From Diadema antillarum (Eukaryota): 64,000 bases of DNA. The stretch is taken from assembly GCF_040938485.1 (NCBI RefSeq), contig NW_027271834.1, positions 248,001 to 312,000 on the forward strand, read 5' to 3'. The notes beneath the pieces were generated by a model. That model worked only from the letters and a program-made list of their open reading frames with translations. It had not been told where the DNA came from and did no database searches. This document shows positions 24,101 through 27,100 of the stretch, in pieces (within the stretch, counting starts at the first letter, position 1; the number at the start of each line of letters is the position of its first letter). The translations under genes and the position numbers were made by a program.

Positions 24101-27100
24101 TGACCCGATTACATTTTCGCCTTTTTTTTCATTCACTACGTCAGGTTGGAGGTGAATTTGCCACTACTGCCATCATGAACATGCGACAATACGGCCGAAT
24201 ATCATGCTGCGGCTCTATTTCGACATACAACACTGACAACCCTGTGAAGAGTGAGTCCGACTATACACTTTCAGGACAATTCAATATGCGTTAAAACACA
24301 AGTGATATCAGCGTGCAGCGTATGAGTTAACACTAACATTGACAGATTTAAAACAAAGACACATTATAACCAAAAACAACTTCACCTAATGTAACTATAG
24401 ATTGATACAGAGAGGAGATTCATGGGTACCCTAGCTGCTGGGCTCCACTCAAAGAAGGGGTCATCCCACTAGACCGACACCCACGAGTCATACAGCCCAC
24501 GAGTTCGACATTGAAAACAAGTCCATGAGTCATTAAGCCCATGAGTTCGACACTAGGTAAAAATAGCCCACAAGTTCGACAGATACAACACGTCGCTTAA
24601 TGTGTCGGTCTCGTGGGCCTTTTTGGCTTAGTGTCGAACTCATGGGCTGTATGACTGGTGAGCTTTATAACTCATTGGCTGTATGACTTGTGAGCTGCAT
24701 GACTCGTGGGCTGTATGACTCGTGGGTGTCGGTCTCTTGACGTGCACCCCTCAAAGAATTATAGTGAAAGAAGAACTCCCAAGTCCTTTCCTTGGAATCA
24801 CTGACATTCAAGGAACATATTTGTATACGCGATAGATTCTACATTGAATTGAAATATGGTTGGGGTAAATATGATGATGAGAAAAAAAGAGTAACATAAC
24901 TAGGCCTATGAATGTGACAAGAGAGAGAAATAAGAAAAGACAACAGGAAGAATTTTATTTTCCCAAATATTTTAAAGATCATCTGCTTTCCTAGTAACCC
25001 CTCCTTCTCTCTCTCTCTCTTCTGTCCTTTGAAAGACTAGAAGAGGTAATGTCATGAAATAGTATAATACTGCATAACTAAAACGAATCACATTATTGCG
25101 GGCCTACAGCTTTATCGGCTGAATTTGTCAAAATTAGACTCAAAATGGAGTCAAACCTCCTGCTTTTGTATTTCCCTCCCATACTTATTTGGCTCCTTGC
25201 CCTTGATTTCCAACCCGTCCCTTTTGTTTTCTTTGTTCTGTGTCCCTATACCCCTCCCATGTTGTGTGTTGTCTTTATGTGATTGCTTTCCCTGCCTGTT
25301 TGTCATATTGCCTCTGACGAAGATTCTGGTAGGATCGAAAGCGTAGGCCCCTTTTGACTCCATTTTACACCATTGTTTCGCCACTATTGGATAAGCAGTT
25401 CTCAGTAAGGCTTAATTGCACTGAATAAAATATTCATTGCAAGGTTGGATTTAGAAGAGATGGCGGACATCTTGGAGAGGATGAAGGTGTCTTCTTTGGT
25501 CTTTTACTCTTCATGTTATAATGCTTTTCTGCAAGCAGGTTTTATTACATACTGTAGGTCCTGCTTTAGATTAAAAGAAAAATAGTAAAGCAAAAAAGGC
25601 CGTACGCATAGCCAGCGGACAATTTTATTAGGAAAATTGAAATAAAAATGATGTATCAAGACTTCTGCGGCGCATTCTCCGTTTAACGCCGGAATGTTAT
25701 TCGTGGAGTGCTTCTCGTGAAGACACTAACACACTTTTTTCTCATCTTTTTATTCCTTTCTCGTCCTGTCTCCATCTCACAATCTTTATCCTCACTCATT
25801 CTCTAACTGAGTCTCAAGAAATCCTAACACACTTACTGTCTCTCTCTCATTTCTATAGTACAGTGTACCGTATACCCTATATAAGTTACTGTTCGCAAAT
25901 AGATTATTTCATGCGTTTTGTGTGTTTGCTTATCTAGCGACTGGCATCTTTGGGAGGATGGTATTCCTTGAGCTGAAGATGCAAGGATTCCTGATACCGA
26001 CTCACGCTGAGCGTTACCCCGAGGGTCTTGCAGATCTGACCAAGTGGGTTACAGAAGTAAGTAATTGTGTGGACATAATAGTATAGGTTTTCCCGGTCAG
26101 TGTCATTCTTTTGTCATTCAAAGTTCATGGACACTGATGACTGTGCATTCAAATTCACACAACGCACGTTCGCGAATACAATTATTTGGGCATTTAAATT
26201 CAGAATCAGAGTGATCAATTTCATTTATGGGAGCTCTTTTTCGTTATCTTTAAACGAAATTCACGCATGGGCGTTCACTTTCCAAATGCGAGCATTACAT
26301 TCCTACTCGTGCATCTAAATTCACGCGATAGTCATGTGACAGTCCCCAATGAGCTTGTTTGGAGCGTGCAATTTCATTTTCAGGTGATCAATTTTCTACT
26401 TCGTGCAATCAATTTAATGAAGAAAATGGAATAGATTTTTGAAGAAAGGAGGAAGAGGCATACAGGCTTGCATATGATTATTATTGTTTAGAGGTCTTAT
26501 AATTGTTCTGTGTTCATGTATTCGTTGTTTTTCATCTCAAGAAATTTTATATTGTAAGGTCCAATCGATAGTGCATCCAAACAACACAACGAAAATCTAA
26601 TTTCTTAATGACACCGCATGCTGACAACTCCCAAACACTAACCATACAATGAAAATGCATCAATTTGAAGACACACTGACACAATAATTATATTAATTGT
26701 ATTAATTACTGTATTAATTTCTCCTTTATTCATAATAAATCAGTATGCCTTAACATGTTGCTTTGATTCATAATTATGTTGTTGAAGACTGATTGTTGAT
26801 ATGAAATTGACATTTCTCATATTGATTTGTATGTGATACTTTCCTTTTTTTTTTGCACACTCAGTATCACTTTGTTTTCATTTGTTATCGTATTTGGAGA
26901 ACGAAAATGCAGAAATAAAATATACCAAACCAATGATCTCATTGTCCCGCTAAAAGTAAACAAATAAGAATAAAAAACGAACAAGACGTATACAATGTGT
27001 AGTTCATCAGATATAGTCAGATTTTTTTTTAAAGGTGTCAATCAATCTTCCCTATTATGCTCGTTTGTAGGCCTACAGTGCCTAATGTGCCTGTATATTC

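What the first reader, a model, noticed from the sequence alone, without database searches (positions are those of the whole stretch)
25938..26056. Amino-acid divergence between B and C is concentrated in one exon 8 patch
Seen: [25 protein letters not shown] versus [25 protein letters not shown] (40815-40933) gives 9 of the 15 total B/C substitutions within codons 254-277. Across exon 8 I counted 10 non-synonymous and 6 synonymous nucleotide changes, while exons 2, 3, 5, 7 and 9 encode identical peptides. Recalled: this segment forms the dimer beta-strand and the part of the substrate pocket contributed by the partner subunit. Inference: a specificity cassette that escapes homogenisation while the scaffold is converted. 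It may also determine whether B/C heterodimers form.
Basis: partly seen in the sequence, partly recalled or inferred. Interest (0 to 1): 0.7.

Follow-up and report, generated by a model that had tools for sequence, protein, structure and literature searches.

The report
Unconverted pocket patch in duplicated reductases
Two neighbouring sea-urchin copies of a prostaglandin/alkenal reductase gene keep most of their exons alike by copying sequence between each other, but a 24-codon stretch that lines the substrate pocket has stayed different; this is a clean example of a known evolutionary pattern, and its effect on the enzymes is untested.

Summary
B and C are intact 328-codon, 9-exon PTGR1-like genes. 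They differ at 15 residues, 9 of them in codons 254-277. Exon 8 has 10 non-synonymous and 6 synonymous changes, and exons 2, 3, 5, 7 and 9 encode identical peptides. The clustering is far beyond chance (scan statistic p about 1e-5).

- **Gene conversion of the scaffold is well supported.** Silent divergence in most exons (dS 0.08) is far below intron divergence (K at least 0.22). Allelic copies on the second haplotype (contig C35) show silent sites evolving at least as fast as introns. Identical B=C tracts have sharp ends and run into non-coding DNA.
- **The patch keeps old divergence.** It differs at 14 of 73 nt, as introns do, and does so on both haplotypes.
- **The patch is not the only unconverted island.** The last 33 nt of exon 4 is another.
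- **Selection and function are unproven.** Positive selection is not shown (omega 0.64; McDonald-Kreitman test not significant). One of the nine changes (E277) is a private allele.
- **Location fits a role in specificity.** By homology the patch covers pocket residues tested in a plant relative. Substrate effects and heterodimers are untested.

Earlier notes of this scan report similar exon-restricted conversion at other loci of this genome. This is a new member of a known kind.

The parts
15138..27920 (+). Gene B, PTGR1-like reductase, 9 coding exons: 15138-15246, 16368-16413, 17630-17686, 21095-21259, 22363-22480, 23347-23502, 24145-24250, 25938-26056, 27810-27920. 328 codons.
   Evidence: Exon borders read from the sequence, all GT-AG, frame intact. 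Pfam ADH_N_2 and ADH_zinc_N hits on exons. PDB PTGR1 hits at 1e-16 to 1e-18.
32286..42989 (+). Gene C, tandem paralog of B with the same 9-exon structure: 32286-32394, 33570-33615, 34165-34221, 37139-37303, 37845-37962, 38964-39119, 39618-39723, 40815-40933, 42879-42989.
   Evidence: 42 nt and 15 aa differences from B.
4266..12283 (+). Gene A, an older tandem paralog with 9 exons (47-93% aa identity to B per exon). It lies outside the conversion group. Its exon 8 is at about 10283-10399.
   Evidence: tblastn of B exon peptides against the window.
25940..26011 (+). Divergent patch in B, codons 254-277 (first 73 nt of exon 8). 14 nt differences from C, 9 aa differences.
   Evidence: dN 0.20, dS 0.32, omega 0.64. 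B versus C 14/73, C versus C' 0/73, B versus B' 6/73.
40817..40888 (+). The same patch in C, codons 254-277.
   Evidence: Identical in the second-haplotype allele C'.
26012..26056 (+). 3' part of exon 8 (codons 278-292). Peptide identical in B and C; about 2 silent differences.
   Evidence: 2/46 over 26011-26056.
21227..21259 (+). Second unconverted island: the last 33 nt of exon 4 in B (C: 37271-37303). 8 differences, 6 silent and 2 conservative (L119M, L124M).
   Evidence: 8/33 B versus C but 0/33 B versus B' and C versus C'. dS about 1.1, omega 0.06. Change-point inside the exon, Fisher p = 5e-5.
21078..21226 (+). Conversion tract: 149 nt identical between B and C (C: 37122-37270). It covers 17 nt of intron 3 plus the 5' 132 nt of exon 4.
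   Evidence: B versus C 0/149, while the alleles differ by 8/149 (B versus B') and 5/149 (C versus C').
24125..24233 (+). Conversion tract: 109 nt identical between B and C (C: 39598-39706). It covers 20 nt of intron 6 plus most of exon 7.
   Evidence: B' differs from B at 7 sites over 24125-24250. The first 100 nt of intron 7 differ 20/99 between B and C.
27701..27921 (+). Conversion tract: 221 nt with 2 mismatches between B and C (C: 42770-42990). It covers the last 109 nt of intron 8 plus exon 9 and ends at the stop codon.
   Evidence: the intron part is 1/109 B versus C against 10/64 B versus B'. P(1 or fewer of 109 at the intron rate) = 4e-9. The next 120 nt of 3' UTR differ 23/116.
17643..17727 (+). 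Conversion tract: 85 nt identical between B and C (C: 34178-34262). It covers most of exon 3 plus 41 nt of intron 3.

Best explanation
B and C are old tandem duplicates of a zinc-independent NADPH-dependent PTGR1-type reductase (15-oxo-prostaglandin / alkenal double-bond reductase, medium-chain dehydrogenase/reductase superfamily).

Shown: short, exon-centred gene-conversion events, some younger than the split of the two haplotypes in this assembly, keep about 90% of the coding sequence nearly identical. The introns have drifted to at least 20% divergence or can no longer be aligned. Two islands have not been converted: the first 73 nt of exon 8 (codons 254-277) and the last 33 nt of exon 4.

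By alignment, the exon 8 island encodes the conserved K-M-Q-G-F core and its variable flanks. These correspond to the last Rossmann strand and the neighbouring residues that line the substrate pocket in solved relatives.

Inferred: amino-acid changes here are tolerated or favoured, and they tune substrate preference between the two enzymes. Conversion across the island is either removed by selection or blocked by its 19% mismatch density. The outcome is two enzymes with a shared, homogenised scaffold and different pocket linings.
For: Family:
- Exon 6 matches guinea-pig and human PTGR1 at 2.5e-18 and 4.5e-16.
- Exon 7 aligns without gaps to human PTGR1, including the I-S-T-Y-N motif with the catalytic Tyr.
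- Pfam ADH_N_2 and ADH_zinc_N are hit.

Conversion:
- Introns are overwhelmingly (B,B')|(C,C') in site pattern. B versus C intron K80 is 0.217 over the 30% that still aligns.
- Synonymous divergence outside the two islands is only 0.083.
- Alleles show dS of 0.10 and 0.03 against intron K of 0.054 and 0.019, so silent sites are not slow. The paralog/allele ratio is 5.0 in introns and 1.24 at silent exon sites (p = 6e-5).
- Identical tracts of 85-221 nt have sharp ends and run into introns.
- B equals C over 149 nt where both differ from their own alleles.

Escape:
- Patch differences are 14/73 for B versus C and 12/73 for B' versus C', but 0/73 for C versus C'. The silent paralog/allele ratio in the patch is 4.1, like introns.
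- No other locus in the genome carries either patch type, so neither was imported.
- B-type exon 8 contigs with 3 differences in about 155 nt sit beside C- or D-type contigs in three other public samples, two of them under another organism label.

Function:
- Patch omega is 0.64 against 0.08 elsewhere. The N:S ratio differs (Fisher p = 0.003).
- The exon 4 island shows that non-conversion alone gives omega 0.06.
- B M260 aligns with MpPR L271, so MpPR pocket residues F281, V282, V283, V284 and Y287 correspond to B F270, L271 (M in C), I272, P273 and A276.
- Mutating V282 or V284 in MpPR changed Km 8- to 100-fold and altered stereoselectivity (PMC8670242).
- Dimeric relatives pair through a Rossmann beta-strand (PMC5343027).
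- The same positions vary in every paralog, including A, D and the copies on C778 and C1400.
Against: - Omega in the patch is below 1 in five of the six between-paralog comparisons run. The exception, B' versus C' at 1.49, rests on 2 silent changes.
- The McDonald-Kreitman table (fixed 8N:2S, polymorphic 4N:2S) is not significant.
- The excess of silent divergence in the patch over the other exons is only suggestive (p about 0.1).
- A second island (the exon 4 tail) escaped conversion without any functional-looking change, so escape can happen by chance.
- B and B' differ at 4 residues inside the patch, which fits relaxed constraint as well as it fits selection.
- Only L271M falls on an experimentally tested pocket position. 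Four of the changes (V261I, E264D, L271M, T274S) are conservative.
- No expression data were found. The only runs available were DNA.
- No structure or enzyme assay of these proteins exists here.
Confidence: 0.55

Rival explanations
1. Conversion is real, but the patch is only a tolerant, fast-drifting segment. It was missed by conversion by chance, or because its own mismatch density now blocks heteroduplex formation. There is no adaptive specialisation, and B and C do the same job.
For: - Omega is 0.64, below 1, and the McDonald-Kreitman test is not significant.
- Patch dN (0.20) about equals intron K (0.22), as expected for near-neutral change.
- The exon 4 tail also escaped without functional change.
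- B and B' differ at 4 patch residues.
- The patch is the least conserved part in every paralog comparison.
Against: - The invariant positions inside the patch (F257, M260, L265-M267, G269, F270) alternate with the variable ones, so the segment is structured rather than free.
- The variable positions coincide with pocket residues validated by mutagenesis in a relative (PMC8670242).
- C and C' are identical across the patch, and D and D' differ at one site, so most lineages conserve their own version.
- B-type exon 8 differs at only 3 of about 155 nt in other samples.
Confidence: 0.33
2. There is no gene conversion. Exons are alike only because of purifying selection, including on silent sites, and exon 8 is simply less constrained.
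For: Exons are expected to be more conserved than introns. Short intron flanks carry splicing signals.
Against: - Allelic comparisons show silent sites changing 1.6-1.9 times faster than introns, yet paralog silent divergence is 2.6 times lower than intron divergence.
- There is a sharp change-point inside exon 4: 0 of about 31 silent sites differ, then 6 of 10 (p = 5e-5).
- 109 nt of intron 8 are 99% identical between B and C, while B' differs there at 10 of 64.
Confidence: 0.03
3. One copy acquired its patch from a third paralog by conversion, so the patch is an import rather than an escape.
For: The family has at least 9 loci per haplotype. B' shares a few single states with D.
Against: - A six-frame search of the whole assembly with B exon 8 finds only B, C, D and A and their alleles on the second haplotype, plus two chance-level matches (C609/C1128, E = 8.8). 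None carries either patch type elsewhere.
- D differs from both B and C. Polarising the 10 fixed differences with D puts changes on both lineages.
Confidence: 0.03
4. The identical B=C tracts are artefacts of assembly or polishing, with reads of one paralog correcting the other. This would exaggerate the contrast with exon 8.
For: The second-haplotype contig carries two single-base homopolymer frameshifts, so consensus quality is not perfect.
Against: - Homogenised exons are seen independently on both haplotype contigs and in paralog D.
- The tracts include intron sequence whose unconverted state (B') is about 16% different, too far for mis-polishing.
- The heterozygous site 26010 appears at about half depth in an independent contig set from what is probably the source sample.
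Confidence: 0.04

Closest known systems
Vertebrate prostaglandin reductase 1 (PTGR1; LTB4 12-hydroxydehydrogenase / 15-oxo-prostaglandin 13-reductase; PDB 1v3t, 2y05, 1zsv)
   Same: - About the same length (328 versus 329 residues).
- The N-terminal ADH_N_2 domain and the Rossmann domain are present.
- The A-A-G-A-V-G cofactor motif and the I-S-T-Y-N motif with the catalytic Tyr at position 245 are present.
- Exons 6 and 7 align without gaps.
- PTGR1 is described as a homodimer (PMC13748546).
   Different: - Here there is a family of at least 9 loci per haplotype, with a tandem triplet A-B-C.
- The segment after Tyr245 lacks the vertebrate proline-rich stretch (recalled from Hori et al. 2004; that paper is not held in the library).
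- It differs at most positions flanking the G-F core.
- Substrates are unknown.
Plant double-bond reductases and pulegone reductases (MpPR 7eql, NtPR 7vr2, AtAER 2j3h)
   Same: They belong to the same subfamily. The strand F281-V284 and Y287 of MpPR align with B 270-276. These residues differ between enzymes of different specificity, and mutating them changes Km and stereoselectivity (PMC8670242; PMC13570306).
   Different: In plants the specificity differences are between diverged genes, with no reported concerted evolution of the rest. Here only L271M hits a tested position, and nothing has been assayed.
Mosaic concerted evolution with a protected functional segment, such as primate L/M opsin genes or RHD/RHCE (recalled from the literature, not checked here)
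   Same: Tandem duplicates are homogenised by short conversion tracts. The few sites or exons that carry the functional difference stay diverged.
   Different: In those cases the functional effect of the protected sites is measured and selection is demonstrated. Here both are inferred.
Other exon-restricted conversion cases noted by this scan in the same genome (MGST array, RIG-I-like pair, CYP46-like pair)
   Same: Near-identical exons with diverged introns in tandem paralogs. One note describes a skipped substrate-access exon.
   Different: These are different gene families. They are unchecked notes used as leads only.

Membership tests
PTGR1 / alkenal double-bond reductase subfamily of medium-chain dehydrogenases/reductases | N-terminal oxidoreductase domain (Pfam ADH_N_2) | tested here: met
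   Exon 1 scores 24.1 bits (profile positions 1-31) and exon 4 scores 30.2 bits (profile positions 74-106), E = 3.6e-5 and 4.4e-7. Each exon alone is below the whole-protein cut-off of 31. The joined protein was not scanned.
PTGR1 / alkenal double-bond reductase subfamily of medium-chain dehydrogenases/reductases | Rossmann cofactor domain (Pfam ADH_zinc_N) with a glycine-rich A-x-x-G-x-x-G motif | tested here: met
   Exon 6 alone scores 45.3 bits, above the cut-off of 31.8. The motif A-A-G-A-V-G is read in exon 5 of B and C.
PTGR1 / alkenal double-bond reductase subfamily of medium-chain dehydrogenases/reductases | Closest solved relatives are PTGR1 and double-bond reductases, not zinc alcohol dehydrogenases | tested here: met
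   The top PDB hits for exons 6 and 7 are 1v3t, 2y05 and 9d6y (PTGR1), followed by plant double-bond reductases.
PTGR1 / alkenal double-bond reductase subfamily of medium-chain dehydrogenases/reductases | Catalytic tyrosine after the fifth Rossmann strand (Tyr245 in PTGR1, Tyr257 in MpPR) | tested here: met
   The I-S-T-Y-N motif is identical to human PTGR1. Exon 7 position 28 aligns with 7eql residue 257. It is present in A, B, C and D.
PTGR1 / alkenal double-bond reductase subfamily of medium-chain dehydrogenases/reductases | NADPH-dependent reduction of alpha,beta-unsaturated carbonyls; homodimer | not testable with these tools
   This needs recombinant protein. Spliced proteins have no reference here, so no fold or complex job was run.
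Concerted evolution by gene conversion with an unconverted island | Silent divergence in exons far below intron divergence, and not explained by silent-site constraint | tested here: met
   dS is 0.083 against intron K of at least 0.217. Alleles show dS/K of 1.6-1.9. The ratio test gives p = 6e-5.
Concerted evolution by gene conversion with an unconverted island | Tracts with sharp ends that include non-coding DNA, and paralogs identical where alleles differ | tested here: met
   Tracts at 27701-27921, 21078-21226, 24125-24233 and 17643-17727. Pairwise tract table.
Concerted evolution by gene conversion with an unconverted island | The island keeps lineage-specific sequence on independent haplotypes or samples | tested here: met
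   There are 10 fixed (B,B')|(C,C') sites in the first 64 nt of exon 8. B-type and non-B-type contigs are found in other samples.
Concerted evolution by gene conversion with an unconverted island | The island is maintained by selection (omega above 1, or excess fixed replacements) | tested here: not met
   Omega is 0.64 for B versus C. The McDonald-Kreitman test gives p = 0.6. The sample is too small to exclude selection.

The most novel reading that the evidence does not exclude
The exon 8 island is actively protected. Conversion events that carry one paralog's pocket lining into the other are removed by selection, because B and C reduce different lipid-derived electrophiles. On this reading the unusually divergent B alleles (4-5 residue differences in exon 8 within one individual) are a balanced polymorphism for substrate range. 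A modular arrangement of shared scaffold plus private pocket strand would then be a general way in which this expanded sea-urchin reductase family diversifies.
Probability: 0.25. Interest if true: 0.55.

Novelty: new member of a known kind. Interest (0 to 1): 0.35.

Why it matters
If the patch does set substrate preference, this locus is a compact natural experiment. It offers two enzymes that are 98% identical outside a 24-residue segment, plus a third (D) and allelic variants. Together they point directly at the residues that tune specificity in the PTGR1/double-bond-reductase family, which matters for eicosanoid inactivation, detoxification of lipid-peroxidation products and biocatalysis. 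For genome evolution it adds a well-resolved case of exon-scale gene conversion with mapped tract ends. The resolution comes from having both haplotypes in one assembly. The phenomenon itself is textbook.

Tried and rejected
- **Cross-species or full-length relatives.** An exhaustive protein search with the 39-residue exon 8 gave only three marginal, irrelevant hits. No orthologs from other urchins were obtained, so no site-model dN/dS was possible.
- **Expression.** The run search found no RNA run. The four runs laid were genomic contigs, so exon borders and expression remain unconfirmed by reads.
- **Structure of the dimer, homo- versus heterodimer.** Not run. The spliced proteins have no reference. 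Exons were concatenated only inside scripts to keep codon phase for counting.
- **Literature on the PTGR1 dimer pore.** The original structure paper is not held, and four searches gave nothing specific. The statement that the omega-chain pore lies on the dimer interface therefore rests on my recollection. Only the general beta-strand dimer statement (PMC5343027) and the pocket residues (PMC8670242) are cited from text.
- **Pfam on exon 8 alone.** No hit.
- **Other donors for the private B' variants.** No closer locus exists in the genome.
- **Rejected readings.** Import of the patch from a third paralog, and purifying selection without conversion (see rival explanations).
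Full report
**What is there.** The window holds three tandem, same-strand copies of a 9-exon gene: A at 4266-12283, B at 15138-27920 and C at 32286-42989. I rebuilt B and C from the sequence. Every intron is GT-AG, and both reading frames are open for 328 codons.

The family is PTGR1 (leukotriene B4 12-hydroxydehydrogenase / 15-oxo-prostaglandin 13-reductase) and the alkenal double-bond reductases. Exon 6 alone matches guinea-pig and human PTGR1 at 2.5e-18 and 4.5e-16. 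Exon 7 aligns without gaps to human PTGR1, including the motif that holds the catalytic tyrosine. Pfam finds ADH_N_2 on exons 1 and 4 and ADH_zinc_N on exon 6.

Earlier notes of this scan call the genome a sea urchin (Diadema). I did not verify the species.

The joined protein was not sent to any search, fold or complex tool. Exons were concatenated only inside scripts, to keep codon phase for counting.

**The observation.**
- 15 amino-acid differences between B and C, 9 of them in codons 254-277.
- 10 non-synonymous and 6 synonymous differences in exon 8.
- Identical peptides for exons 2, 3, 5, 7 and 9.

In 200,000 random placements of 15 changes, only 2 put 9 or more in a 24-codon window. 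The clustering also exceeds what the family's own rate heterogeneity predicts. Using A-versus-B differences as the rate proxy, about 2 of 15 changes are expected in the patch (p = 5e-5).

**A second haplotype gives alleles.** The assembly is 1.75 Gb, and every PTGR1-like locus occurs on a pair of contigs. Contig C35 carries A', B' and C' in the same order. A fourth close paralog, D, sits on C430, with its allele D' on C616.

Intron divergence is 5.4% between B and B' and 1.9% between C and C'. Between B and C it is 21.7% in the 30% of intron sequence that still aligns. In a four-way genomic alignment the introns are overwhelmingly of the pattern (B,B')|(C,C'). C35 is therefore the allelic haplotype, and B and C are old duplicates.

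An independent contig set, probably from the sequenced individual, shows position 26010 at half depth for each base. That fits heterozygosity.

**Gene conversion of the scaffold.**
- Outside two small islands, synonymous divergence between B and C is 0.083. That is 2.6 times lower than intron divergence.
- Silent-site constraint does not explain this. Between alleles, dS is 1.6-1.9 times the intron K.
- The paralog-to-allele ratio of silent differences is 5.0 in introns and 1.24 in these exons (p = 6e-5).
- Exons 1, 7 and 9 have no fixed B-versus-C difference at all.
- Identical B=C runs have sharp ends and include non-coding DNA:
  - 27701-27921 has 2 mismatches in 221 nt, of which 109 nt are intron. 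P = 4e-9 at the intron rate.
  - 21078-21226 is 149 nt identical and ends inside exon 4.
  - 24125-24233 and 17643-17727 are also identical.
- In these tracts B equals C where B differs from its own allele B'. Examples are 0/149 against 8/149, and 1/109 against 10/64. At least some events are therefore younger than the haplotype split.
- No other locus could have donated the private variants of B'.

**The patch as an unconverted island.**
- In the first 73 nt of exon 8, B and C differ at 14 sites (19%), the same density as introns.
- B' and C' differ there at 12 sites. C and C' are identical.
- Ten sites are fixed between the two lineages.
- The silent paralog-to-allele ratio in the patch is 4.1, like introns.
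- A genome-wide search with B exon 8 finds only B, C, D and A with their alleles, plus two chance-level matches (C609/C1128, E = 8.8). Neither patch type was imported from elsewhere.
- With D as outgroup, changes fall on both lineages.
- In three other public DNA samples, two under a different organism label, a B-type exon 8 with 3 differences in about 155 nt sits beside a clearly different C- or D-type contig.

- The patch is not the only island. The last 33 nt of exon 4 (21227-21259) differ at 8 sites between B and C and at none between alleles. Six of the 8 are silent. The change-point inside exon 4 is significant (p = 5e-5).
- E277 of B is a private allele. B', C, D and the other samples all carry the glycine codon.

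**Selection or drift?**
- Patch dN is 0.20 and dS is 0.32, giving omega 0.64. Elsewhere omega is 0.08. The N:S ratio differs significantly (Fisher p = 0.003).
- The exon 4 island shows that lack of conversion by itself gives omega 0.06. The patch is therefore intrinsically permissive or favoured for replacement.
- Omega is not above 1. A McDonald-Kreitman table (fixed 8N:2S, polymorphic 4N:2S) is not significant.
- B and B' differ at four residues within the patch.
- The same positions (261-264 and 271-277) vary in every paralog, while F257, M260, L265-M267, G269 and F270 stay fixed.

These data fit either recurrent tuning of a functional surface or near-neutral drift of a tolerant one. They do not decide between the two.

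**Where the patch sits.** A profile of the exon 8 peptides aligns B M260 with MpPR L271 and with guinea-pig PTGR1 residue 260. Exon 7 fixes B Y245 to MpPR Y257.

The pocket residues of mint pulegone reductase are F281, V282, V283, V284 and Y287. They correspond to B F270, L271 (M in C), I272, P273 and A276. In that enzyme, V282 and V284 substitutions changed Km 8- to 100-fold and shifted stereoselectivity. These same positions differ between reductases of different specificity (PMC8670242; PMC13570306).

Dimeric relatives, including the Arabidopsis alkenal reductase, pair through a Rossmann beta-strand into a 12-stranded sheet (PMC5343027). PTGR1 is described as a homodimer (PMC13748546).

That the pocket part is supplied by the partner subunit, and that the vertebrate pore lies on the dimer interface, rest on recollection of a paper I could not open. 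Only one of the nine changes (L271M) lands on an experimentally tested position.

**Verdict.** The "specificity cassette" half is plausible by homology but unproven. The heterodimer idea is untested.

The pattern of tandem duplicates homogenised by conversion, except for a functionally variable segment, is well known from other gene families. By this scan's own notes it recurs at other loci of this genome. I rate it a new member of a known kind, of moderate interest. Its main value is as a ready-made set of natural chimeras for specificity work on PTGR1-type reductases.

Noticed in passing
L012/L013 region, contig C35 (C' exon 5; c35rc 48198-48314): The second-haplotype copy of C has a 1-nt deletion in a run of five G in exon 5, which shifts the frame. 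It is either a null allele or a homopolymer consensus error.
   Followed up: partly
L015/L016 region, contig C35 (A' exon 6; c35rc 10094-10250): The second-haplotype copy of A has a 1-nt insertion in a run of A in exon 6 and is otherwise identical to A. Again this is a frameshift allele or a homopolymer error. Two such cases on one contig suggest lower consensus quality.
   Followed up: partly
Contig C35, intron 7 of B' (c35rc 25534-37126): Intron 7 is 11.6 kb in B' against 1.7 kb in B, so the two haplotypes differ by a roughly 10-kb insertion or deletion.
   Followed up: no
window 24457-24749, 25165-25546, 26121-27265: These stretches of B introns 7 and 8 are high-copy repeats. Contig depth there is hundreds to thousands of times the flanks, in all four public runs.
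   Followed up: no
   Followed up: no
window 10410-10877 versus 20403-20863; 34318-34595 versus 40152-40430; 47850-48176 versus 48587-48936: Three pairs of inverted repeat copies (83-88% identity), the first two pairs inside introns of A/B and of C. They are probably copies of transposable elements.
   Followed up: no
G000 contigs C430/C616, C778/C1848, C1400/C123, C93/C1322, C334/C532: The PTGR1-like family is expanded. Besides A-B-C there is D (98% identical to B in exon 6), one copy on C778, a cluster of four on C1400, and two distant members. Each is present on two contigs, which shows that the assembly holds both haplotypes.
   Followed up: partly
window 21078-21259 (exon 4 of B) and contig C35: Paralog D, on another contig, also has low silent divergence from B and C in most exons (0.16-0.19) but high divergence in the exon 4 tail (0.56-0.68). 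D may therefore take part in the same concerted evolution despite not being in the array.
   Followed up: partly
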